From positions 62,001 through 126,000 of the IMG/VR virus record IMGVR_UViG_3300029922_000001: a stretch of DNA of 64,000 bases, one strand, 5' to 3'. Position 1 is the stretch's first letter. Each line of letters begins with the position of its first letter. Below, piece by piece: positions 5,973 to 27,334 of the stretch. The notes beneath the pieces are model-generated. The model saw only the letters and a program-made list of their open reading frames with translations. It was not told the origin of the DNA and did not search any database. A program made the position numbers and the translations under genes.

Positions 5973-6687
5973 AGTTAAGTTAAACAGCACAGAGTTAATA
6001 GATATTTGCGGAGAATTAGTTCGCAAAACTGGAGTAAAGAAAGACAAATCTTTATTTAAATTACCTCCTAATTTCACTAGTGACAAAATCACTAGTGAAA
6101 AAAACTTAATAGCTTTGTTTCGTGTTTTATCCGAATATGAAGACGGCAGACATTTGAAGTTAATTAATTTGCCACAACTATATAATAAGTATGGCGGTTT
6201 ACCAATTTTAGAAGATAGTCAATATCGTACTGTACATAATTGGTTACAACAAGCACATTTTGCGTTTAGAGCAATTTTAGTCGAAAAAGCCATGCGACAA
6301 TTTGATAACCTTAATGATGCTGCTAAATGGGTTTATGAGCAAATGTATTTTAATAAACCTAGAAAATCATTTATTGCTAAAGACGGTAATGTTTACAAAC
6401 CACTTCGATATGCAACCTCTGAAGTTATTTTAAAATGGATTCAACAGGAATGTGAACAAAATCAACTAAATAAAGAATATGGTGCAAAAATCACAGTTGT
6501 AGAGTGGGAACTATACGGTTTACACGGAAAACTAAGAACTGCACAAAAAAATCTAACTCAAGAAATAAATTCAGTAGTAAAAATTGCAAAAACTTTAGAT
6601 TATAAAGGTTTTGCTCCCAATGCTGACGAACTAGATGATAAGTTAAATTCTTTTCTTGAGAATTTAGAAATAATGGATGGTGTTTAA
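5965..6687 (+). CDS. Hypothetical protein with C-terminal helical tag
   Basis: Start reassigned to ATG 5965, which overlaps the previous stop; ends LRTAQK...KIAKTLDYKGFAPNADELD. Confidence 0.7.
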   Translation: MVKVKLNSTELIDICGELVRKTGVKKDKSLFKLPPNFTSDKITSEKNLIALFRVLSEYEDGRHLKLINLPQLYNKYGGLPILEDSQYRTVHNWLQQAHFAFRAILVEKAMRQFDNLNDAAKWVYEQMYFNKPRKSFIAKDGNVYKPLRYATSEVILKWIQQECEQNQLNKEYGAKITVVEWELYGLHGKLRTAQKNLTQEINSVVKIAKTLDYKGFAPNADELDDKLNSFLENLEIMDGV

Positions 6688-14850: not shown

Positions 14851-17475
14851 ATGAGTGAAAAAAATATTCCATTAAGGCAAGTTCTGTCCGAGACTGCACA
14901 AAATGTGACAAGAAATGGTAACAAGCAAAAAGTATCTGTTAATGAAGCAATCATTAACAATGCAATGGACGTTATGGTTCCATTTCCTCGTCCTCATGCA
15001 ACTTCCTTTGAAGGTCGTGGTGCTTCTAGAGATCAAGGTTTAACAAGAACAGCCAATAGAATGAATCGTATTGCTTTTGGTGGAATGGGCGGCGGTGGTA
15101 TGGGTGGCGGTATGGGTGGAACTATTTCCACTCCACCACAATTTTATAGACCACAGTTAACCTCTATTGCTTTTAACACTGTTACACAAAGAAAAGAAGT
15201 ATATAACCAAGTTGATTGGTGGTTAAGAAATGAACCTATTATTGCTGCTGCTATTTTATTCTATTCTAGATTTCCCTTTTCTGGTTGGAAATTAGAAGGT
15301 TGCACCAGTTATGTAAAAGAATATTTCGAAAAGTTAATTGCTAAACTAGAGTTTGCTAAATGGCTACCATTAATTGCACAAGAATACTATGCAATGGGAG
15401 ACTGTTTTGTACAAGCTGAAATTAATTGTCCACTTTGTCATGGAAGTATGCAAGATGAATCAGGACAACCATGTAAGCATGAAGGTGCTGTTTGGAAAAA
15501 TCTTTACGTACATGATCCATCTTCTATCGAAGTAAGTAATGCTTATCCTGGTATGCCACCACAATACTACTTAACACCAACAGAAGAAATGAAAAGAGTT
15601 GTTATGGAAAAGCATCCTCGTGAACATTATGAGGCAATTCCAAATAAACTCAAGATGACTATTGCACAAGGTAATCCTATTCCTTTAGATCCTAGTTGTC
15701 TTACACACTTTAAACATTTTGGTAATGCTTATGCACCTTTTGGCAACTCTTTAATTAAGCCACTATTTCCATTGCTTATGTATAAAGATAGATTGCGCCA
15801 AGCACAATGGTTAATTGCAGAGAGGCACATTCTACCCATCAAAATCGTTAAGTTGGGTTCTGATAAGCGTTATGCTGGTGAAGCCGATCTACAGGCAGTA
15901 CAAGAGGAATTAGCAGCAGTTGCTAACGATCCATTCTTGACCTTAGTCGTACCTCATGACTTTGATTTTGAATTTTACGGTGCAACAGGTAAAGTACTTC
16001 AAATTACAGAAGAATTTGGACTTATTGAAAAAGAAATGATCAATGGTTTGATGCTTAACCAAGCTATTCTTAGTGGTGAAGGTCCTTCATACGCTAATGC
16101 TTCTATCGGTTTACTTGTTATGGCAAGACGTTTAGAAGAATTTAGAAATATAGTTGCAGAATGGATTCAAGAAAAATTATTCAAACCTGTTGCTATGTGG
16201 AACGGTTTCGAAGAAGAAGATGATACAGGTACTACTAAATATATTTATCCTAAGATTAAGTTTGATGACTTACAACTTAAAGATAACACTGGAACACTAC
16301 AGATTGTTATGCAATGTGTTGCTCAAGGATTCTTACCAGTACAAACTATTGTTGAAATGTTAGACTTAGATTGGGATACTCAAGTTGAAAGATTACGCTT
16401 TGAACAATCTATCAATATTATGCAAACCCCATCTGTTACTGGTACTGATATGGGAACAGGATTTAGAGGTCCAATGGGTGCGGATATGTCAGGTGGAATG
16501 GCTCAACAAGCTGGATTACCACCATTACCAATGGGTGGAATGGGTGCTGGTGCATCTGGAAATCCTGGTGGTGCTGGTGGCGGTGGTGCTTTGCCAGGTC
16601 AAGGAAACATCCCAGCAGTAGCTACAATACATTCACCTTGGGCTAGAGTTGCACAAGAAGTTCCTGAAGCTTACAGAATCGCACAAGATTTAACACGTCA
16701 CATTTATAACGAATACAATTTCTCTCAAGTTGATCAAACTAGTAGAGATAAAGGTAGTTATTCTTTGGTTAGAACCGCAGAAGAAAGTATTGGTATGTAC
16801 CGTAAAGCACATGCTATTACTAAAGAAGTATTTATGGAAGCATTAGATAATCCTAGATACAAGCGTAAGGCATCTAGAATCAAGAGTGCGGCTCATGCTA
16901 AGTTCTTAGAAACAGTTCGCCCTATTACTGGTAGAGGTTTCGATAAGCAACTATTACCTGAAAATGAAGTTTACTTTGTTGATTTTGGTAATTTTGTAGG
17001 AACTGGCGTACCAATGAACCGTCTCGCTATTAGAGATTACTTCTTTGATGATTCAGTACAAGAAATTGATGGCGTCAGAGTTGTAACTGCTCAAAGAAAG
17101 CCACAAGTTAATTTGCCTAAAGAGTACTTTACCAGTATCGAACAAGCACTTTACAATATCGTACTTGAAGCTGGTATTCCTTATGCATTTTATGCACAAT
17201 TTGCGGCTGGACCTGATGGTAAATACAAGATTGATGGTGCTTTCCCAGCAATTAAATTAGGGTTTGAAGCTGACTCAGAATCTTTCCACTCTCATGATGA
17301 TCAAATTGCTAGAGATAGACAAAGGGATCAAGAGTTAATGTCTCAAGGTTGGACAATTATGAGATTTACAGATCACGACATTAAACAAAAAGATAAAGAG
17401 GTACTTCGTGTTATCCAAGAAGTTGCATCAAAAATCATGGGACAATCCAGTAACTCCAATACTATCCAACTTTAA
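14851..17475 (+). CDS. Portal protein with C-terminal DUF559-like endonuclease domain
   Basis: Portal-like segments NEPIIAAAILFYSRFP, YAPFGNSLIKPLF..L..KDRLRQAQ, PIKIVKLG, IINGL-like region; position between terL and protease. C-terminus YKIDGAFPAIKLGFEADSESFH..RDRQRDQELMSQGWTIMRF is DUF559-like. Confidence 0.82.
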   Translation: MSEKNIPLRQVLSETAQNVTRNGNKQKVSVNEAIINNAMDVMVPFPRPHATSFEGRGASRDQGLTRTANRMNRIAFGGMGGGGMGGGMGGTISTPPQFYRPQLTSIAFNTVTQRKEVYNQVDWWLRNEPIIAAAILFYSRFPFSGWKLEGCTSYVKEYFEKLIAKLEFAKWLPLIAQEYYAMGDCFVQAEINCPLCHGSMQDESGQPCKHEGAVWKNLYVHDPSSIEVSNAYPGMPPQYYLTPTEEMKRVVMEKHPREHYEAIPNKLKMTIAQGNPIPLDPSCLTHFKHFGNAYAPFGNSLIKPLFPLLMYKDRLRQAQWLIAERHILPIKIVKLGSDKRYAGEADLQAVQEELAAVANDPFLTLVVPHDFDFEFYGATGKVLQITEEFGLIEKEMINGLMLNQAILSGEGPSYANASIGLLVMARRLEEFRNIVAEWIQEKLFKPVAMWNGFEEEDDTGTTKYIYPKIKFDDLQLKDNTGTLQIVMQCVAQGFLPVQTIVEMLDLDWDTQVERLRFEQSINIMQTPSVTGTDMGTGFRGPMGADMSGGMAQQAGLPPLPMGGMGAGASGNPGGAGGGGALPGQGNIPAVATIHSPWARVAQEVPEAYRIAQDLTRHIYNEYNFSQVDQTSRDKGSYSLVRTAEESIGMYRKAHAITKEVFMEALDNPRYKRKASRIKSAAHAKFLETVRPITGRGFDKQLLPENEVYFVDFGNFVGTGVPMNRLAIRDYFFDDSVQEIDGVRVVTAQRKPQVNLPKEYFTSIEQALYNIVLEAGIPYAFYAQFAAGPDGKYKIDGAFPAIKLGFEADSESFHSHDDQIARDRQRDQELMSQGWTIMRFTDHDIKQKDKEVLRVIQEVASKIMGQSSNSNTIQL

Positions 17476-17497
17476 TAAGTTGGATAGATTGCCTGGA

Positions 17498-18124
17498 ATG
17501 CAATTAGGTCATTATTTCAAAGAAAATTATTACTTTATTGAATATAATGCCTTGCCAGAAAACTTATTACTACAAAAAAATAAGTTTCACACTAATTTAC
17601 TTCAAGCTGTTGACTGCATAGAGTCTAACAATAAATATTATGTTGTGTATCCTTTTATTCAAAACAAATACGATTTGATGAAATTGGAATATAATGATAA
17701 ATACACAAAAATAAAACAAATTGTTGATGTTATTAGAGTATTGCACGATGAAAATTTAATTCATGGAGATATACAGCGTAGAAACATCTTAATTGATGAA
17801 GATATACATTTGATTGATCTAGAAACACTGTCCATTAATGACACAATTAGTACTCAGTTTTTAAAAGTACCAGAATTGGTTTATGGTGGGAATTTAAATA
17901 AGCAAACTGACATTTACATGCTCTGTTTATTAATTTACGAAGTTTTAAACGAAAGTGTTATACCAATATTAAAAACCCCATTAGCTTCTATATGCTATTA
18001 CAACACGCTCCAACCTGTCCGCAACAGGTTAAATAAAACACTTTTCGATGTTATCCAAACAGGTTTATCTCCAAACCCCTTAGAACGTAAAGTGGATGTT
18101 CAAGAAATTTATAATTCTTTTTAG
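17498..18124 (+). CDS. Ser/Thr protein kinase-like protein with short N-lobe
   Basis: HGDIQRRNILID catalytic loop, IDLE in place of DFG, VPE, TDIYML..LIYE, LSPNPLER; no Gly-rich loop visible. Start uncertain (17408-17498). Confidence 0.7.
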   Translation: MQLGHYFKENYYFIEYNALPENLLLQKNKFHTNLLQAVDCIESNNKYYVVYPFIQNKYDLMKLEYNDKYTKIKQIVDVIRVLHDENLIHGDIQRRNILIDEDIHLIDLETLSINDTISTQFLKVPELVYGGNLNKQTDIYMLCLLIYEVLNESVIPILKTPLASICYYNTLQPVRNRLNKTLFDVIQTGLSPNPLERKVDVQEIYNSF

Positions 18125-18165: not shown

Positions 18166-18232
18166 AGGTGAAATATATGTGGTTTTTCAAAAAATCATTT
18201 CTGAGCATCGTTTAAGGGAGCCAAAAGAAAAC

Positions 18233-21200
18233 ATGATACGCAAAGGAATATCAGGCGGTGTAATAGGTTTAAACAATTTAATTTGTTTGAACAAAAAAGA
18301 AGCAAACGCAATTAAGGCTAGAATCTTAACGGCATCTAGTTTGCGTGAAAGTGCCCGTATCGGTTTGCAACGTTTGTATGCAGACCCCGAAGATGCACTA
18401 AAGAAATATAAAGGAACCGAATTTGACATCGCCAACGAAATGCTTGAACGTCGTGGCATGAAATTACTATGGGTTAGATGTAGAGCTATTGACGCTAACG
18501 TAGTAAATGCTAATGGTGATTACTTCTCTACTAAAGAGTTATTGAAAGAAACCATACACAATGGCAAAAAAGTTCCAGCCTATAAAACATTTGAAGGCGT
18601 ACCAATTTATACCAATCATGAAAATGATGACATTGAAAAAGCAAAAGGTACTGTAGTTTATGCAGAGTGGGACGAAAAGGAAGAAGCGGTTTATTGTGTA
18701 TTTTACATAGACGAAGAAGCTTATCCCGAAATTGCTCATGCTATTCGTGGTGGAATTATGCACGACGTTAGTATGGGTTGTTTTATTCCAGGTACTAGAG
18801 TATTAACTAATTCAGGATATAAGAATATTGAAAATGTAAATATAAACGATTTACTTTTAGATAAAGATGGTAATTTTACCACTATAGTTAATAGACAAAT
18901 TAAAATTAAAAACGAAGATATTTTTGACATTAAATTTAATGGCGGCTTAACCATTAGTGCAACAAAAGAACATCCTCATTTTGTATTTAAAAAAGATGTA
19001 TGGAAATCTAGAAAAACTAGAAATAAACCAGGCAAAGGAAAAGAACGATGGTCTTATAAAGATATTGGAGAGCCAATTGAAATTACTTCTGAAAACTTAG
19101 AAGTTGGTGACGTGCTAGTAACACCTATTAATCAGGTTGAATTAAATCCTGATAATATAACTCCTGATTTCGCTAGATTATTAGGTTATTTTTTGGCTGA
19201 AGGAAATTTTCTTAAATACAATGATTCTATTAAAGAATTAGAGCTTACTTTTGGTCTTCACGAAAAATATACATTAGTTCAAGAATTTATTACACTTTTT
19301 TCAAAAGAATTTCCAAATTCTACAATTAGAGTATATGATCGTATACCTAACAATAATTGTGTTATTAGAGTATATGACACTGAAATAGCTAATTTATTTT
19401 ACAAATATTGCGGAGAATATTCTGATAGTAAAAAACTAGATTCATCATTAATGTTCCTTCCTAAAAATATTCAATTAGAATTAATCAAAGGGTATTTTAA
19501 TGGTGACGGTTGTATTCATCGTGCTAAAGATCGTGTTATTGGATTAAGCGCATCTTCTTGTTCTTTGGATTTAGTAGAACAAATCTCAATGATATTATTT
19601 AGAAATGGAATTTATCACAAGAAAAATGGAAGAATTAATGGGAAATATATTGAATATACCAAATCTAAAGAAGCATGGAAGCAGAAAGGTGATTTTAGGA
19701 AAACATATTATGAAATTTCTATTCCTCAAGCTTATTGTCCTCAATTGTTAAATGAAACTAGATTTGATTTTCAACCCAACTTACGACAAGATAATTTTCA
19801 TTATGGTAATTGGATAATTCATCCAATTAAAAACATAATCAAAAGACACTATGAAGGATTAGTATATAATTTTGAAACAGAAAGCCATACATATATGGTT
19901 GAGAATTTTGCTACTCATAATTGCGCGGTTCAATCTGGTAATTGTTCAATTTGTGGCAAAGAAGCAGTTAAGGAAGATGATTACTGTAGTCACATGAAGA
20001 ATTACAAGGGTAAGAAATTCCCTGGAACTGGCGAAATTGCTTACGAAAAGAATAAAGATATTAAGTTTATTGAAATCTCTATTGTTGCAGATGGTGCTTT
20101 TGATTCTTGTATGATTAAAGAAATTTACGAACAAGAAGAAATTGAAAATGCTGCTTCACAATTAAGACATAAGACTGCAAGTGTACAAGCAAACATTCTA
20201 TTAGCTGAAAACAATCTTCCAGAAGACATGCTTGAAAGAAGAAAGAGTGAAGAATTCTTACGTGCTATCAATAATTGTAATATTGAAATCTTTAGATTCG
20301 CTGAAAAATTAGGACACACAACTAGAATAGCTCAAGAAGCTGGAACATTAGTTGGTGGACAAATGGGTGGTGGACAAATAGGACAAAACGCTACAGTTAA
20401 TACACTAATGCAATTACTAGGTATTGATCCTACTACTGGATTAAATATCTTAGACATGTTGAACTTAGCTCTTAACTTCTTAGAAGTTGCAGTTATGGAA
20501 TTACTTTCTAAGAGTAGTTCAGTTAAGCTTGAGTACGTTAACAAGGTGACTAAAGCTATGACAGATTTACAAGATGTTATGGAAGACGTTATTAATGACG
20601 GTGTTGATGTTGCACAACAACCACAAGGTGTTCAATTACAAGGTGGTCCAGTTTCACAACAGCAACCAGTACCAGGACAGCAACCACAAGGACAACAACA
20701 ACAAACTCAAGTACCAGGTCAAGGACAACCAGGACAGGTACAACAGCAAGCAAATGTTATGCCAATGGCTTATCAACCAGCAGTTGGTCAGGTAACAGGT
20801 CCTATGTTTGGCGCTTTACCTGGTGTTACAGCTACATCAAGTAATAGAAAATTAGTATGGGCATCACATGATGACGATGATGTTCGTGAGGTTTTTGCCT
20901 CTAGCAATAGAGGTACCAGTGTAAAGAAAGTTAAATCTTTCGATGAAGCTTTAACTCACATTGGAGAAGTAGTTATCAAACTAGCAAGTGCAGTTGGTGT
21001 TGCTGACGATTCATCACTAAAAGCACTCAATTTTAAAATTAAAAAGAATCAAGAACAAAGCAAATCGACTCAACCCGGAGGAAACAATATGGAAAACAAC
21101 ATCTTCAACGAAATGGCGCAAAGACATCGTTTGCGCAACGCATCCAAACTCTCTATTGATGCAGTGTTTACAGACCACTCAAATAGATATAGTGTAGCCA

Positions 21201-23788
21201 TCTCAACAGATGGAACTGTCAAAGCGTCTGTAGACAACAAGCGTGTTGCTTGGGATTGTAGATTGAACGATACTCAAATCGAACGTCTTCAAAACAATGA
21301 CATTGCTCCTGTAGGTAACGAAATTCTAGATACATTTGTTGGTTTTGTTAAAACCGCAGAAACAGAAGGACGTAAAATTCTTGCATACGAAAAGCCAAAA
21401 ACTGTTACTAACATTTTCGAAGTTAGCTTAGAAGGTGAAAGAACTGGTACTGATGATGATGTTAGAGAAAACACTATCAAACCATTAAGAACCGGTGTTG
21501 AAGACGAAACTCAAGAAGTTAAACTTGAAAAGTATCGTACAGGCGTTAAAGAAGATGTTAGAGAAAATCTACTAGCAGATGAAGCTGGTTTATATGCACG
21601 TCGTAACGAAGAACGTGATATTGCAGAAGTTCTTTTGGAAGATGCTCGTGTTGGAGTTAATGAAGAAGTATTAGAAAATAAGCTTAATCATCACCGTGCC
21701 CAAGAAAGCAGTGTTGAAACACATGAAGCTGTTGCTAAAGTTCTAAGTGGTTTTGGTAATGCTGTACTAGCATCTAAGAATACTCCAGATGAAGTAGTTA
21801 CTGCCGCTATTGAATTAGCTAAGAAAGACAACTTCAATGAATTATTGGTAGTTGCTGCTGCTGGAACACAAACTAGAACAAAAGTTGCTTCTAGATATGC
21901 TTTCCACAACAAACCACTTCCTACACTATCTGCTTCTGCCGCTGTTCTTAATGAATTAGGTAAGGTAATCGTTAGTGGAGTTTCTGCTGTTGATGTTGCT
22001 CAAATTGTTAGAGAAGCAAGTGCAAATAAAGATCATGCTGTTAAAGCAGCATATATTGATGCTAAAGGTAAAATGGGAGAAGACTTCTCATTCGACGCTT
22101 ATTATTCTCAAAGAGAAGCAAGTAAAACAGACGCTATTCGTGTCGCGTTAGCTAGTTTATCAGGCGATGCAAATGATAACATTTCAGGTGTTGAACAAGT
22201 TAAAACAGCTTTGGCTGCTATGGCAAAAACAACTGTTGCTATCAAAGTTACACCAAAGGAAATTCTTACAGTATTAGCTAGTGTTGATGCTAAGCAATTA
22301 TCCAAGGACTTAACAGTTGCAAGAGATGCTAAAGAAGTTAAAGCAAGAAATGATTTACGTGAAAGAGTTGCCTTCTTTGAAGGTGCAAACATCCGTATCG
22401 CTAGTGAAGTAGACATCTACAATACTATCGTAGGTTACTTAGCTGACTATGCCAACAAAGATAAGTTCAATACATCTTCTATCGTAGAAGCTATTGGTAG
22501 AGTTGTAGACAAACCTCGTTATGCTGAGAAATATGTTTCTCGTTTAGCTTTCTCAAGTATTAGAGAAGCTGAAGCTACTATTACAGAAGACACAAACATC
22601 ACTCGTCGTCTTCAATGTACATTGGGTGAATTAGGATTAGACGCTAAAGATGAAAACTTTGACGACATGTTAAAGCAAAAAGTTGCTGAACTATTCGTTC
22701 AAAGAGGATATCCTATTGATCCAAACAACTTTAATCTAACTGATGTTATGATTACTGCTGAAGGTGCATGTACAGCAACTATTAGTACACGTTCAACAAA
22801 GACATTCAAAGTTGATCCTAGTGAATCTGGTGAAGATGAAAATGTAATCTCAGTAGATGGCGCTCCTACTCCTTTTGAACCAGAAGCACAACCTACAGAG
22901 GGTGAAGGCGTTCCTCTTGTTCCTACAGATATGTCTCTACCTCCGACAGATCCAAACGAACAACCAACTATCATGACTGCTGGTGCAATTGCTCTTAGAA
23001 AAGCTAAGAGAGAAAATCTATTAAGATTAGCTCAAATGCCAGGTGGCGGTGGTGGTGGAATGCCAGGTGCTGGCGGTGGAATGCCAGGTGGTGCTGGTGC
23101 TGCTGGTGCTGCTGGCGCACCTGATTTATCTGGTGCTGGTGACGGTCCTGGTGTTGGTGCATTAACCAATCCTCCTGATGGTGGATTAGATGATATGGGT
23201 GGAAGTGATCAAGCTACTGAAAACAAGGATTCTATGCCTACTCCTGGTAAGCAACTTCCTTGGGGTTCAATCTGTCCTGCCTGTGGTTCTGCTAGTGTTT
23301 CATTAGTAGACGGTAAAGGTAGCTGTGCTGATTGTAAAGCTGAAATCACATATGAATTCAAAGCAACAGTTATTCCTGGTAGCAAGAAGAATGAAGAAGC
23401 TCCTACAGATGAAATGTCTATGGACATTCCAGGCTTAGGAACCTTGCCAGGTGCTGAAGCTGGTGCAAATGGTGCAACCCCTCCTGCTGGTGGCGCACCA
23501 GGAATGGGCGGTGCTGCTCCTGCTGGTGGACAAGCTCTACTACAAGCACAAGCTTCTTGGTTAGCTGATAGTCGTACTTTTGTTAGAACAGCACAAGCTG
23601 ACTTTAACAAAGCTACAGAACAAGTTCTACCTCCTGGTTTCATCTGTCCTGGTTGTGCAAACAGAGAAGTTAATAAACTTGGATCTCAAACATTCTGTTA
23701 CGCTTGTAAGACAATAAGTAAGAGTCAAATTATAGCTTCCAGAATCCCTGGAAAGGTTATAGCTAGAGTCACTTGGGTTCTTAAATAA
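18233..23788 (+). CDS. Prohead (maturation) serine protease fused to a long scaffold-like region; intein-containing
   Basis: NANGDYF, IYTNH (putative catalytic His), DVSMG (putative catalytic Ser), CSICG..CSH, FIEISIVADGA fit HK97-type prohead proteases; AAGGGAG SD favours start 18233 over GTG 18179. Confidence 0.85.
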   Translation: MIRKGISGGVIGLNNLICLNKKEANAIKARILTASSLRESARIGLQRLYADPEDALKKYKGTEFDIANEMLERRGMKLLWVRCRAIDANVVNANGDYFSTKELLKETIHNGKKVPAYKTFEGVPIYTNHENDDIEKAKGTVVYAEWDEKEEAVYCVFYIDEEAYPEIAHAIRGGIMHDVSMGCFIPGTRVLTNSGYKNIENVNINDLLLDKDGNFTTIVNRQIKIKNEDIFDIKFNGGLTISATKEHPHFVFKKDVWKSRKTRNKPGKGKERWSYKDIGEPIEITSENLEVGDVLVTPINQVELNPDNITPDFARLLGYFLAEGNFLKYNDSIKELELTFGLHEKYTLVQEFITLFSKEFPNSTIRVYDRIPNNNCVIRVYDTEIANLFYKYCGEYSDSKKLDSSLMFLPKNIQLELIKGYFNGDGCIHRAKDRVIGLSASSCSLDLVEQISMILFRNGIYHKKNGRINGKYIEYTKSKEAWKQKGDFRKTYYEISIPQAYCPQLLNETRFDFQPNLRQDNFHYGNWIIHPIKNIIKRHYEGLVYNFETESHTYMVENFATHNCAVQSGNCSICGKEAVKEDDYCSHMKNYKGKKFPGTGEIAYEKNKDIKFIEISIVADGAFDSCMIKEIYEQEEIENAASQLRHKTASVQANILLAENNLPEDMLERRKSEEFLRAINNCNIEIFRFAEKLGHTTRIAQEAGTLVGGQMGGGQIGQNATVNTLMQLLGIDPTTGLNILDMLNLALNFLEVAVMELLSKSSSVKLEYVNKVTKAMTDLQDVMEDVINDGVDVAQQPQGVQLQGGPVSQQQPVPGQQPQGQQQQTQVPGQGQPGQVQQQANVMPMAYQPAVGQVTGPMFGALPGVTATSSNRKLVWASHDDDDVREVFASSNRGTSVKKVKSFDEALTHIGEVVIKLASAVGVADDSSLKALNFKIKKNQEQSKSTQPGGNNMENNIFNEMAQRHRLRNASKLSIDAVFTDHSNRYSVAISTDGTVKASVDNKRVAWDCRLNDTQIERLQNNDIAPVGNEILDTFVGFVKTAETEGRKILAYEKPKTVTNIFEVSLEGERTGTDDDVRENTIKPLRTGVEDETQEVKLEKYRTGVKEDVRENLLADEAGLYARRNEERDIAEVLLEDARVGVNEEVLENKLNHHRAQESSVETHEAVAKVLSGFGNAVLASKNTPDEVVTAAIELAKKDNFNELLVVAAAGTQTRTKVASRYAFHNKPLPTLSASAAVLNELGKVIVSGVSAVDVAQIVREASANKDHAVKAAYIDAKGKMGEDFSFDAYYSQREASKTDAIRVALASLSGDANDNISGVEQVKTALAAMAKTTVAIKVTPKEILTVLASVDAKQLSKDLTVARDAKEVKARNDLRERVAFFEGANIRIASEVDIYNTIVGYLADYANKDKFNTSSIVEAIGRVVDKPRYAEKYVSRLAFSSIREAEATITEDTNITRRLQCTLGELGLDAKDENFDDMLKQKVAELFVQRGYPIDPNNFNLTDVMITAEGACTATISTRSTKTFKVDPSESGEDENVISVDGAPTPFEPEAQPTEGEGVPLVPTDMSLPPTDPNEQPTIMTAGAIALRKAKRENLLRLAQMPGGGGGGMPGAGGGMPGGAGAAGAAGAPDLSGAGDGPGVGALTNPPDGGLDDMGGSDQATENKDSMPTPGKQLPWGSICPACGSASVSLVDGKGSCADCKAEITYEFKATVIPGSKKNEEAPTDEMSMDIPGLGTLPGAEAGANGATPPAGGAPGMGGAAPAGGQALLQAQASWLADSRTFVRTAQADFNKATEQVLPPGFICPGCANREVNKLGSQTFCYACKTISKSQIIASRIPGKVIARVTWVLK
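18779..19921 (+). mobile_element. Intein with LAGLIDADG homing endonuclease (381 aa)
   Basis: N-terminal CFIPGTRVLT, block B SATKEHP, LAGLIDADG motifs LLGYFLAEG and IKGYFNGDG, C-terminal VYNFETESHTY...THN followed by +1 Cys; visibly more AT-rich than its flanks. Confidence 0.95.
21440..21698 (+). repeat. About five degenerate ~16-aa repeats (R-T/V-G-x-[DE]..E..L) in the protease extension
   Basis: RTGTDDDVRENTIKPL / RTGVEDETQEVKLEKY / RTGVKEDVRENLL / RRNEERDIAEVLLEDA / RVGVNEEVLENKLNHH. Confidence 0.7.
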
Positions 23789-23971: not shown

Positions 23972-25768
23972 ATGAAGAATAACAATGACAGAATAGCGAA
24001 AGCGATGAGGTTAGCCGAACTTGCCTTAGAAGATAAGCGTGATGTAAATCAATGCATTGATGAAATGCAAACATTCGCAGGTTTATCTCCTGAAGAAGCA
24101 AAGATCGTAACTTCTTCACTCAGAGCGGGACTTTACCCTCAAGAATTAAGAGCGGAAGGTTTCTCTGATGAAGAAATTCAACACCTTATCACTGCTAATG
24201 CTGACTTCGCAACAGACCCAACTCAAACGCCTCAACCATTCCAAAAGCCAGTTAAATCTGGAGTACCTGGAGTAGTTGAATACAAAGACGAAACTGATGA
24301 TACAGATGAAGATTCCGAACCAGCAATGCTAGGTGGAGAAGACGAAGATGAAGATGCAGTAGATGACACTGAAACAAACGAATTTCCAACAACAGACCCA
24401 AGCGAAGATACAGATGACGAATTTGATACAACCGGTAATGATGACACTGCTGAACTAACAGTAGAAGTGCCTAAAGAAAAATTACTTGCCCTTCAACAAG
24501 CTATTGCAGATGTTTTTGCCGAACAAGGTATGGATGACTTTGGTGATACCGAATCTCCATCTCCATTTGACGGTGACGACACTAGTGAATTTGCTAACGA
24601 AAGCGGTTCAGACGAACACTTGCATTCAGGTGACGACGATGAACTCGGTGACGATTATGACATAGAAATTATGGACGACGAACCAGTTCATGGCAAACCT
24701 GCATCACGTGGTTTCCCTAAAGAACCTGATTTCGGTAGTGAAGATGAAGTAGATGATGTTCGTGATTTTGACGATGATAAACATGTTTTATCAAAATTAG
24801 AGGTAGACAAAATGACTAAAGAAGTTTTAGCTAAAAGAAAAGCCGCTAGAGAGGCATTACTAGCACAAGCAAAGACAAAGAGCGTCAGAACAGCATCAGA
24901 TGGAGAGCAAGAAACAAAGGGCGTTGGCTTAGCTGCTGACCCTGCTTCTAATACATTTGATAAATCAAAGGCTGCTCAATTGCACACAGATGAATTTGAT
25001 TTTGAACGTGACAGCTTAGACAATAGTCAAGGCAGTGAACTCGTTAACGAAGCAAAGTGGAAACCTGCAAAACAAGAAATTCCTACTTTGAACAAGGGAC
25101 GTTTAGAACTCAACAAGGCATATACACCTTCTACTATGGAAGGTTCACCAGAAGATCGTTCTGATTACGTTATTGACTTTGATGTTTATGACATTCCAAG
25201 CCAAATGACTGATGCAGAACGTGGCAAATTACCCAAGATTCCTCAAACCGAAGGTGGCGCATTTGATTCTCATAGAGGTCAAGTATTAGCTACTGCTAAA
25301 GACGGTAAGAAAGAAAAGAAAGGCGACAAGGAAGCAGAAAATCTAAAGATTGAAGTTGAAGCGAAAGCTAAGAAAGCTTTAGATGAAGCATTTATTTCTG
25401 AAAGAGCAAGAATGAAGACTGCTTATTCATGTGCTTATAGATTAGTTGCAGCTAACCACATTAACGTGGATGAAGCTGATGGATTCGTAGACATGTGGCT
25501 AGACAATAACGCAACAGCTAAACAAATTAAGGTGCAAACCGGTGTTATGCTTCGTTCTTCTGGCGCTATCAACAATAACAGAATGGCATCATCTGATGCT
25601 CCTTCTACTAGAACAGCTTCAAAATCAACAGTACCAACCTTTGTGGGCTACGGTTCACTAAGCAATCCTGCTGTCGAAGATTTGAAACAGGCATTGAGCG
25701 GGGTTTGGTCCACTCCCAGCAAAGATGAATTTGAACAATGGACTAACAGAAATTTGGAGGATAAATAA
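23972..25768 (+). CDS. Acidic scaffold-like protein
   Basis: 598 aa, very D/E-rich first half, coiled-coil-like C-half, VRTAS/RMAS/RTAS motifs; lies between protease and capsid genes. Confidence 0.6.
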   Translation: MKNNNDRIAKAMRLAELALEDKRDVNQCIDEMQTFAGLSPEEAKIVTSSLRAGLYPQELRAEGFSDEEIQHLITANADFATDPTQTPQPFQKPVKSGVPGVVEYKDETDDTDEDSEPAMLGGEDEDEDAVDDTETNEFPTTDPSEDTDDEFDTTGNDDTAELTVEVPKEKLLALQQAIADVFAEQGMDDFGDTESPSPFDGDDTSEFANESGSDEHLHSGDDDELGDDYDIEIMDDEPVHGKPASRGFPKEPDFGSEDEVDDVRDFDDDKHVLSKLEVDKMTKEVLAKRKAAREALLAQAKTKSVRTASDGEQETKGVGLAADPASNTFDKSKAAQLHTDEFDFERDSLDNSQGSELVNEAKWKPAKQEIPTLNKGRLELNKAYTPSTMEGSPEDRSDYVIDFDVYDIPSQMTDAERGKLPKIPQTEGGAFDSHRGQVLATAKDGKKEKKGDKEAENLKIEVEAKAKKALDEAFISERARMKTAYSCAYRLVAANHINVDEADGFVDMWLDNNATAKQIKVQTGVMLRSSGAINNNRMASSDAPSTRTASKSTVPTFVGYGSLSNPAVEDLKQALSGVWSTPSKDEFEQWTNRNLEDK

Positions 25769-25770
25769 TT

Positions 25771-26451
25771 ATGGCAATGAAAGAACTATTCAGCATATTA
25801 ACTACAACTTATCCAGTTACAGCAGATGCTAACTGGAGACAAGGAGCAGTTATGCTTTTAGACGTTACAACAGGTAACGTATTAACAGCTAATCGTCTAG
25901 GTACTGCCGCTCAAAATGGATTATTCGTCGGTTTTTCCGCTGATAATACCGCTAAGGTAGCTACCGAAATTCAACCTTCTCCTGCTGGATCTAACTATAT
26001 TTCCGGTGGACAATTCTTAGCTAATAACAACGGTTATTTCGTAGCTTTGAAGAGAAACGTCATGTTAACAGTTGCTGGTGAAACAATCACTAACCCAACT
26101 AACTTTACAGACTTAACAGCCGCAGGTAACTCCGGTCCACGTAGAGGATGCTCTGTATTCTCTAATGGCGGTAAGTTTATTACTGACATGTTAGCTTGGG
26201 ACGGCAGCGGTAACGCAGTTCAAACCAACGGTACTAACGCCGACAACACTTCTGGAACCATGTATGCCATCGGTGATTTACTTACCTGGTCCGCTGGAAC
26301 CTACTCTGGAACAACCGGTTTATTGGTTAGAATTGCCTCCGGTGATATGGCTACTTCTCGTGCAGTAGCTCGTATTGAGAATTTACAACTCGGATCTATC
26401 AAGTCTAATACAGTTCAAAACTCAACATTAGCCTTCATATCTGCACTATAA
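25771..26451 (+). CDS. Head decoration / minor capsid protein
   Basis: 226 aa Gly/Thr/Asn-rich, directly upstream of the major capsid gene. Confidence 0.55.
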   Translation: MAMKELFSILTTTYPVTADANWRQGAVMLLDVTTGNVLTANRLGTAAQNGLFVGFSADNTAKVATEIQPSPAGSNYISGGQFLANNNGYFVALKRNVMLTVAGETITNPTNFTDLTAAGNSGPRRGCSVFSNGGKFITDMLAWDGSGNAVQTNGTNADNTSGTMYAIGDLLTWSAGTYSGTTGLLVRIASGDMATSRAVARIENLQLGSIKSNTVQNSTLAFISAL

Positions 26452-26464
26452 GGAGAAAACAAAA

Positions 26465-27334
26465 ATGTCATCAATGATTAGAAATAATAAAGCATATAAT
26501 GAACAAAGAGAAGCCATCATTGCAATGGCAGTGGAAACACCTGATGGTCGTTCCGCTCTTGCTGGAGCTATGGTAGACCCTATCAAGAACGCTCTTAACT
26601 ACCAAGGCGTTATCCGTAAATTAATTATGGTAGACGAACTACCTCAAGGTGCTTACCCTCGCTACGAAAGAGATATTACAGTCAAAAGCTGGATCATCGG
26701 TAATCGTGCTGGTGTACCTGTTAGCGTTATCGAAGGCGAAGACTTATTTATCCCTACAGTCGAATTAGCAGCATTGCCTACAATTCGTCTCCAAGAGGTG
26801 AAAAGCAGGAGATATTACATAGTAGATCGTGCCCAAGTTAAGGCTAAGGACTCTCTACAACGTCAAGAAGATACTCTAGGATTTGAAGTTATCAACGCTG
26901 CTGTTCCAACAGAACAGTCAATTACAGTAGTTGGACAATTGCAACCTGAGAACCTTAACCACGCTTTAACACTTATTGAAGAACATGAATTGGTCGGAGC
27001 AAAGATAGTCCTTCCTCCTTCACGTTACAAAGATATTAGAGGCTTTGGTAAGGAATTCTTTGATGAAGCAACTCAAAGAGATATCTTAATGACAGGACTT
27101 TATGGACACATTTACTCTGCGGACATCCACGTAAGTACTATGGTTCCTAAGAACTGTGTGTATATCATGGCTCCTGCCCAATTCGTTGGTGCAATGCCTA
27201 TTCGTCAAGACGTTACAGTTATCCCTGCTGACGATCCTCGCAAGCTTCGCTTGGGTTGGGTAGTCTACGAAGATATCGGTATTGGCGTCATCAACGACTA
27301 TTCTTTGGCTCGTATTCAAGTAACTGTTTCCTAA
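26465..27334 (+). CDS. Major capsid protein (HK97 fold)
   Basis: AGGAG SD, strong terminator downstream; ALAGAMVDPIKNALNYQGVIRKL, VDELPQG, VDRAQ..A...QRQED, GLYGHIYSADI, GWVVYE pattern of large-phage capsids. Confidence 0.85.
   Translation: MSSMIRNNKAYNEQREAIIAMAVETPDGRSALAGAMVDPIKNALNYQGVIRKLIMVDELPQGAYPRYERDITVKSWIIGNRAGVPVSVIEGEDLFIPTVELAALPTIRLQEVKSRRYYIVDRAQVKAKDSLQRQEDTLGFEVINAAVPTEQSITVVGQLQPENLNHALTLIEEHELVGAKIVLPPSRYKDIRGFGKEFFDEATQRDILMTGLYGHIYSADIHVSTMVPKNCVYIMAPAQFVGAMPIRQDVTVIPADDPRKLRLGWVVYEDIGIGVINDYSLARIQVTVS

What the first reader, a model, noticed from the sequence alone, without database searches (positions are those of the whole stretch)
18770..19924. Homing-endonuclease intein three residues after the putative catalytic serine of the prohead protease
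Seen: DVSMG|CFIPG...ATHN|CAVQ; the intein carries both LAGLIDADG motifs. Established: inteins favour active sites, and phage inteins are mostly reported in nucleotide-handling proteins and terminases. Inference: head maturation depends on splicing here, a possible timing or redox switch since both junction residues are Cys.
Basis: partly seen in the sequence, partly recalled or inferred. Interest (0 to 1): 0.6.

Follow-up and report, generated by a model that had tools for sequence, protein, structure and literature searches.

The report
Homing intein splitting a phage prohead protease
A 441-kb peat phage carries a self-splicing, mobile protein insert (an intein with its own homing nuclease) three residues after the catalytic serine of its only head-maturation protease, so that enzyme probably cannot work until the insert has cut itself out; this host protein is unusual for a phage intein, but the element itself is ordinary.

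Summary
Window 18779-19921 (+) encodes a 381-aa class-1 intein with a LAGLIDADG homing-endonuclease domain. Splicing blocks A, B and G are canonical; block F has Asn where Asp is common. Its AF2 model matches the TliVMA, PI-SceI and PI-PfuI inteins (E 1e-18 to 1e-15). Fifty-seven related phage loci have the uninterrupted sequence HDVSMG|(C/A)xV, which fixes both boundaries.

The host is the N-terminal prohead serine protease domain of an 1869-aa protease/scaffold-like fusion. It lies between the portal and major capsid genes and is single-copy in the genome. In an alignment with HK97 gp4, window His147 and Ser198 fall in the columns of gp4 His65 and Ser114, so the VSMG serine is very probably the nucleophile. 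The link is by sequence profile and fold, not a residue-level structural superposition.

New findings: homologous inteins occupy the same site in at least six diverged lineages. A seventh phage has one four residues upstream, on the other side of the serine. None of 308 GenBank phages with this protease shows a split. The same genome has inteins in RNR and PhoH.

That protease activity requires splicing is a sound inference. The redox or timing switch has no support. This is a new member of a known kind, of moderate interest.

The parts
18179..23788 (+). Single ORF of 1869 aa (GTG 18179; the real start is perhaps ATG 18233). It encodes a prohead serine protease domain interrupted by the intein, followed by a roughly 1200-aa scaffold-like tail that is part low-complexity and part helical.
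   Evidence: ORF. The family profile A2 matches only window 18233-18784 and 19922-20272 in the whole 441-kb genome. Intein-free homologues are 1376-1438 aa. The PHROG 'head maturation protease' family hits both exteins.
18179..18778 (+). N-extein (200 aa), the first half of the protease fold. It holds the putative catalytic His147 (codon 18617-18619, motif YTNHENDD) and the nucleophile Ser198 (codon 18770-18772, motif DVSMG).
   Evidence: phrog_18299 at 1.2e-9 and phrog_2774 at 5e-14. His and Ser are invariant in A1 and A2 and fall in the columns of HK97 gp4 His65 and Ser114. NF045541 bridges this family and HK97 gp4.
18779..19921 (+). Class-1 intein with a LAGLIDADG homing endonuclease, 381 aa. 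Features: Cys1 (18779-18781); block B T62-K-E-H65 (18962-18973); LAGLIDADG motif 1 with Glu141 (19178-19207); motif 2 with Asp243 (19481-19513); blocks F and G, LVYNFETESHTYMVENFATHN (19859-19921), with penultimate His and terminal Asn381.
   Evidence: GC is 27.1% (GC3 13.6%), against 37-39% (GC3 19-29%) in the exteins.
19922..20272 (+). Start of the C-extein, the second half of the protease fold. It holds Cys+1 (19922-19924), a CxxC...CxH zinc-ribbon insert (19943-19993), and the conserved FIEIS/ADGAF strand with invariant Glu632 (20066-20101).
   Evidence: phrog_18299 positions 185-247 at 1.1e-7. A2 profile positions 170-282 at E 7e-33. Invariant E, S and A columns are shared with HK97 gp4.
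20273..23788 (+). Remainder of the C-extein: a long helical region with Gln/Gly-rich low-complexity stretches, and two C-terminal CxxC...CxxC ribbons (23273-23335 and 23645-23707). Presumed scaffold or core function; not tested.
   Evidence: Sequence. The same architecture occurs in Rhodococcus phage E3 gp77 'prohead protease', Gordonia phage Stormageddon gp13 'capsid maturation protease' and Mycobacterium phage LinStu gp97.
14851..17475 (+). Portal protein gene, giving the head-module context.
   Evidence: Portal_Mu at 4.8e-12 and phrog_16240 at 1.3e-37.
26465..27334 (+). Major head protein gene, giving the head-module context.
   Evidence: phrog_2522 'major head protein' at 1.6e-65.

Best explanation
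Window 18779-19921 is a canonical class-1 intein that carries a LAGLIDADG homing endonuclease.

Where it sits. It is inserted in frame in the only prohead (head-maturation) serine protease gene of a 441-kb peat phage. The insertion lies between Gly200 and Cys582, three residues after the nucleophile Ser198. In the model of an intein-free relative, this is inside the beta-strand that carries that serine.

Inferred mechanism.
1. The gene is translated as an 1869-aa precursor whose protease fold is split.
2. The intein splices itself out by the standard route: an N-S acyl shift at Cys1, assisted by the block-B Thr and His; transesterification to Cys+1; cyclisation of Asn381, assisted by the penultimate His; then an S-N shift.
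3. This joins ...DVSMG to CAVQ... and restores the HK97-type His/Ser (probably also Glu) active site.
4. The spliced protease/scaffold fusion then takes part in procapsid assembly and maturation.
5. At the DNA level, the freed endonuclease cuts intein-less copies of the same site in co-infecting relatives. Repair copies the intein in (homing). This accounts for its patchy presence at the identical site in several diverged phage lineages.

Shown here: the intein's identity, boundaries and fold; the existence of empty sites; the host's family and fold; the single copy; conservation of the catalytic residues.

Inferred only: that splicing actually occurs, that the precursor is inactive, and that the endonuclease is active.
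For: Intein identity:
- Pfam LAGLIDADG_3, Intein_splicing and Hint.
- tblastn to inteins in phage terminase, DNA polymerase, helicase and RNR genes.
- The PI-PkoII endonuclease domain at 1.1e-9, with both LAGLIDADG motifs aligned.
- The AF2 model has pLDDT 82.6 and pTM 0.83. It matches TliVMA at 1.4e-18 (TM 0.68-0.70), the PI-SceI chains at 4.5e-16 to 5.5e-13, PI-PfuI at 9.6e-16 and PI-PkoII at 8.5e-15.

Boundaries:
- 57 IMG/VR loci read ...HDVSMG|(A/C)xV... without the insert.
- The PHROG protease profile is continuous over the junction in the empty allele L023 (positions 83-245, E 6.7e-18). It is split in the window into positions 80-140 and 185-247.
- The A2 profile is split at positions 170/171.

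Conservation:
- C1, T62, H65, E141, D243 and N381 are invariant in five inteins at this site that are only 31-40% identical to the window's intein.

Mobility signature:
- The same site is occupied in the window, L003/P0004, P0111/P0112, L149/L153, L154 and L155. Close relatives of these are empty.
- The intein's GC is 27%, against 37-39% in the exteins.

Host protein:
- The AF2 model of the empty allele matches BFVD prohead proteases at E down to 1.2e-13, including entries named 'HK97 family phage prohead protease'.
- The top PDB hits are KSHV protease (E 9e-3, probability 0.9).
- A MAFFT alignment with HK97 gp4 has invariant H, S and E columns, and hhalign picks the same His and Ser pairing.
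- NF045541 hits both L023 (2.2e-5) and HK97 gp4 (2.7e-5) over the His-Ser region.
- The gene lies between the portal and major capsid genes.
- No Pfam S77, S78 or ClpP match and no second copy exists in the genome.

Stability in nature:
- 100%-identical contigs bridge both intein junctions in independent peat metagenomes X3-X5, and no contig skips the intein.
Against: - No protein-level or RNA-level data show that splicing happens.
- Block F position 4 is Asn rather than the common Asp (VYNFE). The Asp is said to assist step 1 in many inteins (PMC10663303). The Asn is invariant in all five inteins aligned from this site, so it is probably tolerated.
- The protease model is only moderate (pLDDT 66.5; the loop around the His is below 50).
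- The PDB fold match is weak (TM 0.24-0.38).
- The hhalign statistics against the single HK97 sequence are poor (E 0.17).
- The identity of the HK97 catalytic residues (His65, Ser114) is recalled from Duda et al. 2013 and Cheng et al. 2004. Neither paper could be opened here.
- The inteins (39% identical) are more diverged than their exteins (51-59%). This argues against recent transfer and leaves open whether the endonuclease still homes.
Confidence: 0.85

Rival explanations
1. Conditional protein splicing. The intein acts as a redox-, zinc- or time-dependent switch. It keeps the protease inactive until procapsids are assembled, for example through a Cys1-Cys+1 disulfide or metal binding near the adjacent zinc ribbon.
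For: - Both junction nucleophiles are Cys.
- A CxxC...CxH ribbon starts 7 residues after Cys+1.
- Conditional splicing by redox and by zinc is documented for other inteins (PMC10663303).
- Prohead proteases do need delayed activation. In T4, gp21 is activated only after prohead assembly (PMC9958956).
Against: - Cys1/Cys+1 is the default for class-1 inteins.
- Cys+1 pre-exists in 65 of 116 empty alleles, and Ala serves equally well in 50.
- Nearly all relatives (117 of the 120 top clusters, and all 308 GenBank phages with the family) manage without any intein. The intein therefore adds no function that the family requires.
- The known MoaA redox trap uses an N-extein Cys, and none lies in the residues just before the junction here.
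- The patchy phyletic pattern fits a selfish element.
Confidence: 0.07
2. Domesticated or decaying intein. The splicing domain still works, but the LAGLIDADG domain no longer homes. The element persists only by vertical descent, because imprecise loss from an active-site strand of an essential single-copy gene would be lethal.
For: - Intein identity between lineages (28-40%) is lower than extein identity (51-59%). This fits long residence better than recent spread.
- No intein-free variant was seen in four peat runs.
- TliVMA and PhoVMA show that both active and inactive endonuclease domains occur in natural inteins (PMC8966425, listed).
Against: - The two catalytic acidic residues (Glu141, Asp243) and both LAGLIDADG helices are invariant across 31-40%-identical inteins. 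The domain is full-length and well folded in the model.
- P0111 and P0112 carry the intein and are 78% identical over the protease domain to the empty allele L023, against 63-77% for most empty alleles. Empty alleles L044 and L049 share their +1 sequences CSVAYG and CSVDYG. This pattern is expected under continuing gain and loss.
Confidence: 0.2
3. Non-functional gene. The intein insertion has inactivated the protease, so the locus is a pseudogene or an assembly chimera.
For: This is a metagenome-assembled genome. A related contig (L002) shows a frameshift inside its protease intein.
Against: - An uninterrupted 5.6-kb frame with every splicing residue in place.
- The only protease-family copy in a genome that CheckV rates as complete.
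- Both junctions are bridged by 100%-identical contigs from three other samples.
- The same architecture recurs in at least five other lineages.
Confidence: 0.02

Closest known systems
Endonuclease-bearing class-1 inteins (PI-SceI/Sce VMA1, TliVMA and PhoVMA, PI-PfuI, PI-PkoII)
   Same: Bipartite HINT splicing domain with an inserted two-motif LAGLIDADG endonuclease. It has Cys1, block B TxxH, terminal His-Asn and a +1 Cys. The fold matches are E 1.4e-18 to 8.5e-15 at TM 0.6-0.7, and the PI-PkoII sequence match is 1.1e-9.
   Different: Sequence identity is only 12-17%. The host protein is a phage prohead protease rather than a V-ATPase, ribonucleotide reductase or DNA polymerase. Block F position 4 is Asn. 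At 381 aa it is shorter than PI-SceI or PI-PfuI, so it probably lacks part of their extra DNA-recognition region; this was not examined in detail.
Phage inteins in TerL, portal, helicase, RNR and others (mycobacteriophage survey, Kelley et al. 2016, PMC5050341)
   Same: Inteins sit in phage-specific, essential morphogenesis or replication proteins, at active-centre motifs, with several independent insertion points in one active centre. The same pattern is seen here: site b after SMG and site a before TSMG. This genome also has classical RNR and PhoH inteins.
   Different: That survey lists no protease host and states that all phage intein hosts bind nucleic acid. A prohead protease does not. 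The cluster C1 homologue examined, LinStu gp97, is intein-free, and all mycobacteriophage matches are single-piece.
HK97-type prohead serine proteases (Pfam Peptidase_S78, MEROPS S78; herpesvirus assemblin fold) and protease-scaffold fusions of large actinophages (phrog_2774/18299: Rhodococcus phage E3 gp77, Gordonia phage Stormageddon gp13, Bxz1-like gp97; Bacillus phage G gp19)
   Same: The host extein shares the fold and the invariant His, Ser and Glu motifs (NH..D, SMG/SVG, E-S-V..A). It has the same position between the portal and capsid genes and, like the actinophage proteins, a long C-terminal extension.
   Different: Pfam S78 itself does not score. This subfamily has a zinc-ribbon insert after the Ser strand that HK97 gp4 lacks. 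None of the 308 GenBank members shows a split at this region.
Inteins in other proteases (Chlamydomonas chloroplast ClpP; archaeal Lon), recalled from the InBase registry and not checked here
   Same: An intein interrupts a serine protease, which must be spliced to become active.
   Different: Those are cellular or organellar housekeeping proteases of unrelated folds, not a viral capsid-maturation protease. A check of one intein review for ClpP and Lon found no mention, so this row is a lead from memory only.

Membership tests
Class-1 intein (HINT splicing domain) | In-frame insertion whose removal restores a contiguous, conserved host protein; intein-less alleles exist | tested here: met
   57 empty alleles read HDVSMG|(A/C)xV. 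PHROG and A2 profiles are continuous in the empty alleles and split exactly at the junction in the window.
Class-1 intein (HINT splicing domain) | Nucleophile at position 1 (Cys/Ser), block B TxxH, C-terminal (His-)Asn, and a +1 Cys/Ser/Thr | tested here: met
   Cys1, T62-K-E-H65, H380-N381 and Cys+1 are present. C1, T62, H65 and N381 are invariant in five inteins at this site.
Class-1 intein (HINT splicing domain) | Block F Asp (F:4), which assists the acyl shift; common but not universal | tested here: not met
   The position is Asn364 (VYNFE), and it is Asn in all five aligned inteins. This is not a strictly defining residue, so it is noted as a deviation.
Class-1 intein (HINT splicing domain) | HINT fold | tested here: met
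   The AF2 model (pLDDT 82.6) aligns over its full length with the TliVMA, PI-SceI and PI-PfuI inteins, with TM 0.6-0.7 and E down to 1.4e-18.
Class-1 intein (HINT splicing domain) | Actual protein splicing (ligated exteins plus free intein) | not testable with these tools
   This needs expression followed by western blot or mass spectrometry, or virion proteomics.
LAGLIDADG homing endonuclease (two-motif, monomeric) | Two LAGLIDADG helices, each ending in a catalytic acidic residue; alpha-beta-beta-alpha-beta-beta-alpha core repeated twice | tested here: met
   Motifs LLGYFLAEG (Glu141) and LIKGYFNGDG (Asp243) are present and invariant. Pfam LAGLIDADG_3 scores 3.9e-9. I-DmoI and I-Tsp061I match the domain at E about 1e-7 with TMt about 0.7.
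LAGLIDADG homing endonuclease (two-motif, monomeric) | Site-specific cleavage of the intein-less allele, and homing | not testable with these tools
   There is only indirect support: the same site is occupied in at least six lineages in a patchy pattern.
HK97-type prohead serine protease (S78-like, assemblin fold) | Match to the curated family model (Pfam PF04586 or TIGR01543) | tested here: not met
   No match, even at E<=10, for the exteins, for the empty allele, or in a genome-wide scan. Membership is therefore claimed only at the superfamily and fold level, through phrog_18299 and NF045541.
HK97-type prohead serine protease (S78-like, assemblin fold) | Assemblin-like fold | tested here: met
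   85 BFVD matches at E<=1e-3. The best is 1.2e-13, and many are named prohead, head-maturation or HK97-family protease. The top PDB hits are KSHV protease at probability 0.85-0.94, but with weak TM. The model is of moderate quality.
HK97-type prohead serine protease (S78-like, assemblin fold) | Conserved catalytic His and Ser (plus a third acidic residue) in the family positions | tested here: met
   His, Ser and Glu are invariant in A1 (28 sequences) and A2 (16 sequences, including phage G gp19, actinophage and Erwinia jumbo-phage proteases, and HK97 gp4). The His and Ser columns coincide with HK97 His65 and Ser114. The His-Ser spacing is 51 residues, against 49 in HK97. That these HK97 residues are catalytic is recalled from the literature, not verified here.
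HK97-type prohead serine protease (S78-like, assemblin fold) | Proteolytic processing of capsid or scaffold proteins | not testable with these tools
   Only gene context is available (portal - protease - major capsid).

The most novel reading that the evidence does not exclude
The catalytic-serine strand of this prohead protease family is a previously unrecognised intein hot spot in large environmental phages, with two independent insertion points flanking the nucleophile. In these phages, splicing has been co-opted as an extra safety catch. It would keep the protease/scaffold fusion inert until it is folded or incorporated, so that capsid maturation is gated by protein splicing. This would be the first case of an intein controlling virion morphogenesis rather than nucleic-acid metabolism.
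Probability: 0.06. Interest if true: 0.8.

Novelty: new member of a known kind. Interest (0 to 1): 0.45.

Why it matters
- It adds a non-nucleic-acid-binding, virion-maturation enzyme to the list of phage intein hosts. The largest phage survey found only nucleic-acid-binding hosts (PMC5050341).
- It is another clear example of inteins targeting the most conserved few codons of an essential gene, here on both sides of one catalytic serine.
- Annotators of huge-phage genomes should expect the head protease to appear as a 1.8-2 kaa 'hypothetical protein' with a LAGLIDADG hit.
- The system gives a simple experimental handle. A protease whose activity depends strictly on splicing is a natural reporter for intein function.
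- The many natural empty sites, with Cys, Ala or Thr at +1, form a ready-made panel for testing endonuclease specificity and resistance to homing.

Tried and rejected
- **Pfam and PDB sequence searches of the exteins and the empty allele.** There were no protease hits, and Pfam S78 does not see this subfamily.
- **hhalign of A1 against the single HK97 gp4 sequence.** It gave the expected His and Ser pairing but poor statistics. An attempt to deepen the HK97 profile from IMG/VR returned only 96-100% identical copies and was abandoned.
- **VIA-align wide search with the protease model.** It was swamped by the C-terminal helical hairpin and was uninformative. The ESM-Atlas shape search gave only unnamed viral clusters.
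- **Literature.** Four searches combining 'intein' with prohead protease, capsid maturation protease, head maturation protease or prohead found no report of such an intein, and a broader term search also found none. Duda 2013, Cheng 2004 and Fokine & Rossmann 2016 are not held, so the HK97 and T4 catalytic residue numbers are from memory.
- **Cluster C1 'hypothetical protein' intein host of Kelley et al.** I considered that it might be the gp97 protease homologue. LinStu gp97 has no intein, and all 308 GenBank matches are single-piece. The identity of that C1 host was not resolved.
- **Intein-free variant in the same phage population.** None was seen in four peat runs. These are low-depth contigs, so absence is weak evidence.
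- I did not use the 1.84-billion-protein representative search, because the family was not left open. No complex prediction was run, because no binding claim is made.
Full report
**1. What is there**

The window is G000:C1:62001-126000 of a 441,498-bp IMG/VR virus record that CheckV rates as complete. Identical DNA occurs in several peat metagenomes.

ORF 18179..23788 (+) is 1869 aa long. The family profile begins to match at ATG 18233, which may be the true start. Residue numbers below count from the GTG at 18179.

- DVSMG is residues 196-200.
- The intein runs from Cys201 (18779) to Asn581 (19921).
- Cys582 (19922) is the +1 residue.

**2. The insert is an endonuclease-bearing class-1 intein**

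- Pfam finds LAGLIDADG_3 (3.9e-9), with weaker, below-cut-off matches to Intein_splicing, Hom_end_hint and Hint_2.
- tblastn against GenBank phages hits only known intein regions, in terminase, DNA polymerase, helicase, RNR, methyltransferase and RecA genes.
- The endonuclease half aligns with PI-PkoII at 1.1e-9, with both LAGLIDADG motifs in register.
- An AF2 model built on five orthologous inteins has pLDDT 82.6 and pTM 0.83. Its best PDB matches are the TliVMA intein (1.4e-18, TM 0.68-0.70), PI-SceI, PI-PfuI, PI-PkoII and PhoVMA. Free LAGLIDADG enzymes such as I-DmoI follow.
- Every canonical splicing residue is present: Cys1, block B T62xxH65, His380-Asn381 and Cys+1. The endonuclease acidic residues Glu141 and Asp243 are also present.
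- All of these are invariant among five inteins from this insertion site that share only 31-40% identity with the window's intein.
- One deviation: block F position 4 is Asn, not Asp, in all five.
- The intein is markedly more AT-rich (GC 27%, GC3 14%) than its exteins (GC 37-39%).

**3. Intein-free alleles exist and fix the boundaries**

A scan of IMG/VR with the first 200 C-extein residues returned 59 loci. Of these, 57 read ...IHDVSMG directly followed by ASVEW..., CSVAYG... or CQVQSG.... One (L003) has a 378-aa intein at the identical point.

A search of the 5.8-billion-protein collection with an empty allele (L023, region 1-300) listed 120 cluster representatives. Three of them (P0004 = L003, P0111, P0112) carry an intein at SMG|C. 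The +1 residue of the others is Cys in 65, Ala in 50 and Thr in 1.

Empty homologues are 1376-1438 aa. This agrees with 1869 - 381 = 1488 aa.

**4. A wider intein hot spot**

A more distant clade was found through L002:
- L147 and L148 have empty sites.
- L149/L153, L154 and L155 have inteins at the same site (SMG|C).
- L002 has an intein four residues upstream (...YATG|C...SN|TSMGC...), with Thr as +1. That places it on the other side of the serine.

All of these inteins are homologous. The window's intein is 39% identical to L003 and P0111, 33% to L149 and 28% to L002. They are more diverged than their exteins: window against L003 is 59% in the N-extein and 51% in the C-extein. The element is therefore old in this gene family, patchily distributed, and not a recent arrival in the window's phage.

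A tblastn with the junction-spanning domain of LinStu gp97 found homologues in 308 GenBank phages, one place per record, and the matches listed are single pieces. None shows a split at this region.

**5. The host is the phage's only prohead protease, and the VSMG serine is the nucleophile**

Family and fold:
- PHROG 'head maturation protease' (phrog_18299) hits the N-extein (profile 80-140) and the C-extein (profile 185-247) separately.
- The same profile hits the empty allele L023 continuously over positions 83-245 (6.7e-18).
- phrog_2774 is the family of the large actinophage proteins annotated as prohead or capsid-maturation protease: Rhodococcus phage E3 gp77 and Gordonia phage Stormageddon gp13.
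- An AF2 model of L023 residues 1-300 is of moderate quality (pLDDT 66.5). It still gives 85 BFVD matches at E<=1e-3, led by Bacillus phage G gp19 (1.2e-13) and including many named prohead, head-maturation or HK97-family proteases.
- In the PDB the top hits are KSHV protease, which has the assemblin fold. They are weak (E 9e-3, TM 0.24-0.38).

Catalytic residues:
- Pfam S78 and TIGR01543 do not score. NCBIfam NF045541 (prohead protease/MCP fusion) matches both L023 (2.2e-5) and HK97 gp4 (2.7e-5) across the His-to-Ser segment, at corresponding profile positions.
- A 16-sequence MAFFT alignment was built from this family, phage G gp19, actinophage, Alcaligenes and Erwinia jumbo-phage proteases, and HK97 gp4.
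- Its only invariant columns are an Asp, the His of NH(K/E)N, the Ser and Gly of SMG/SVG, and the Glu, Ser and Ala of the E-S-V..A strand.
- HK97 His65 and Ser114 fall in the His and Ser columns. hhalign independently chooses the same pairing.
- In window numbering these residues are His147, Ser198 and Glu632. The His-Ser spacing is 51 residues, against 49 in HK97.
- That His65 and Ser114 are the HK97 catalytic residues is my recollection of Duda et al. 2013 and Cheng et al. 2004, which I could not open. PMC7411985 confirms only the general statement that phage prohead proteases use conserved Ser, His and a third residue.

Position of the intein in the fold:
- In the L023 model the Ser lies in strand 176-182, and the insertion point (after Gly180) is inside that strand.

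Single copy and gene context:
- The family profile matches the 441-kb genome only at the two extein halves.
- No Pfam S77, S78 or ClpP match exists in the genome.
- The gene lies between the portal (14851-17475) and the major head protein (26465-27334).

**6. Mechanism**

The best-supported reading is the ordinary one:
1. The gene is translated into a split, inactive protease precursor.
2. Autocatalytic class-1 splicing restores the catalytic strand.
3. The spliced protease/scaffold fusion works in procapsid maturation.
4. At the DNA level, the endonuclease homes into empty sites of co-infecting relatives.

Steps 1-3 are inferred from the anatomy. Step 4 is inferred from conservation of the catalytic residues and from the phyletic pattern.

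- Cys1/Cys+1 is the default pair for class-1 inteins.
- Cys+1 is native to more than half of the empty alleles.
- Almost all relatives do without an intein.
- The documented redox trap uses an N-extein Cys, and none lies near the junction here.

The adjacent CxxC...CxH ribbon (19943-19993) is a feature of the whole protease subfamily, not of the intein-bearing alleles.

**7. Population data**

Contigs from four peat metagenomes other than the probable source are 100% identical to the window. They bridge the N-junction (X3: 18714-18864) and the C-junction (X3: 19702-20059; X4: 19412-20078; X5: 19666-20210). No contig skips the intein. Depth is low and contigs drop rare variants, so an intein-free minority cannot be excluded.

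**8. Context in the genome**

The same phage has an intein in its ribonucleotide reductase large subunit and a LAGLIDADG insert in a PhoH-like ATPase. It carries two typical intein hosts and one atypical one.

**9. Novelty**

The element is a standard kind of intein. What appears to be new:
- the host protein, a capsid-maturation protease;
- the recurrence of this site in at least six diverged lineages of large environmental phages;
- the second insertion point on the other side of the same serine.

The main phage intein survey lists no protease and notes that all phage hosts bind nucleic acid (PMC5050341). Five full-text searches found no report. The library lacks most subscription journals and the InBase registry, so prior description cannot be excluded.

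Noticed in passing
window 17215-17424 (portal ORF 14851-17475, aa 789-858): The portal protein ends in a DUF559 / REase_MTES_1575 (Vsr-like nuclease fold) domain (3.9e-8 and 5.6e-8). The portal of the related contig L002 has the same tail. A nuclease-like domain fused to a portal is unusual.
   Followed up: no
window 17408-18124: A small Ser/Thr protein-kinase-like ORF (Pkinase 6.5e-13; phrog_2361) sits between the portal and protease genes. Its GC is low (29%) and it overlaps the portal stop. It may be a moron or an injected or packaged kinase.
   Followed up: no
L002:311-4813: The portal gene of the related peat-type contig is 1500 aa and appears to contain two LAGLIDADG inteins. The window's portal (874 aa) has none.
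   Followed up: no
L002:5812-7448 (junction near 6270; frameshift near 6310-6320): A homologous intein is inserted four residues upstream of the window's site (YATG|C...SN|TSMGC), with Thr+1 and a penultimate Ser. The contig has a frameshift in an A-run inside the intein; it may be an assembly error or decay.
   Followed up: partly
G000:C1:49528-53161 and G000:C1:188097-189932 (outside the window): There are two further intein-type insertions in the same phage. One is in the ribonucleotide reductase large subunit (Intein_splicing plus LAGLIDADG_3). The other is in a PhoH-like ATPase (LAGLIDADG_3 inside a 612-aa PhoH ORF).
   Followed up: partly
window 19943-19993; 23273-23335; 23645-23707: A CxxC...CxH zinc ribbon is inserted in the protease fold straight after the catalytic strand. 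It is conserved in the whole subfamily, including phage G gp19, Bxz1-like gp97 and Erwinia jumbo phages, but absent from HK97 gp4. Two more CxxC...CxxC ribbons lie at the C-terminus of the fusion protein.
   Followed up: partly
window 23972-25768 and 25771-26451: Two ORFs (598 and 226 aa) between the protease fusion and the major head protein have no PHROG match. They may be scaffold, decoration or core proteins.
   Followed up: no
window 19868-19870 (intein Asn364): Block F position 4 is Asn instead of the usual Asp. It is invariant in five 31-40%-identical inteins at this site. This may define a sub-class of splicing chemistry.
   Followed up: no
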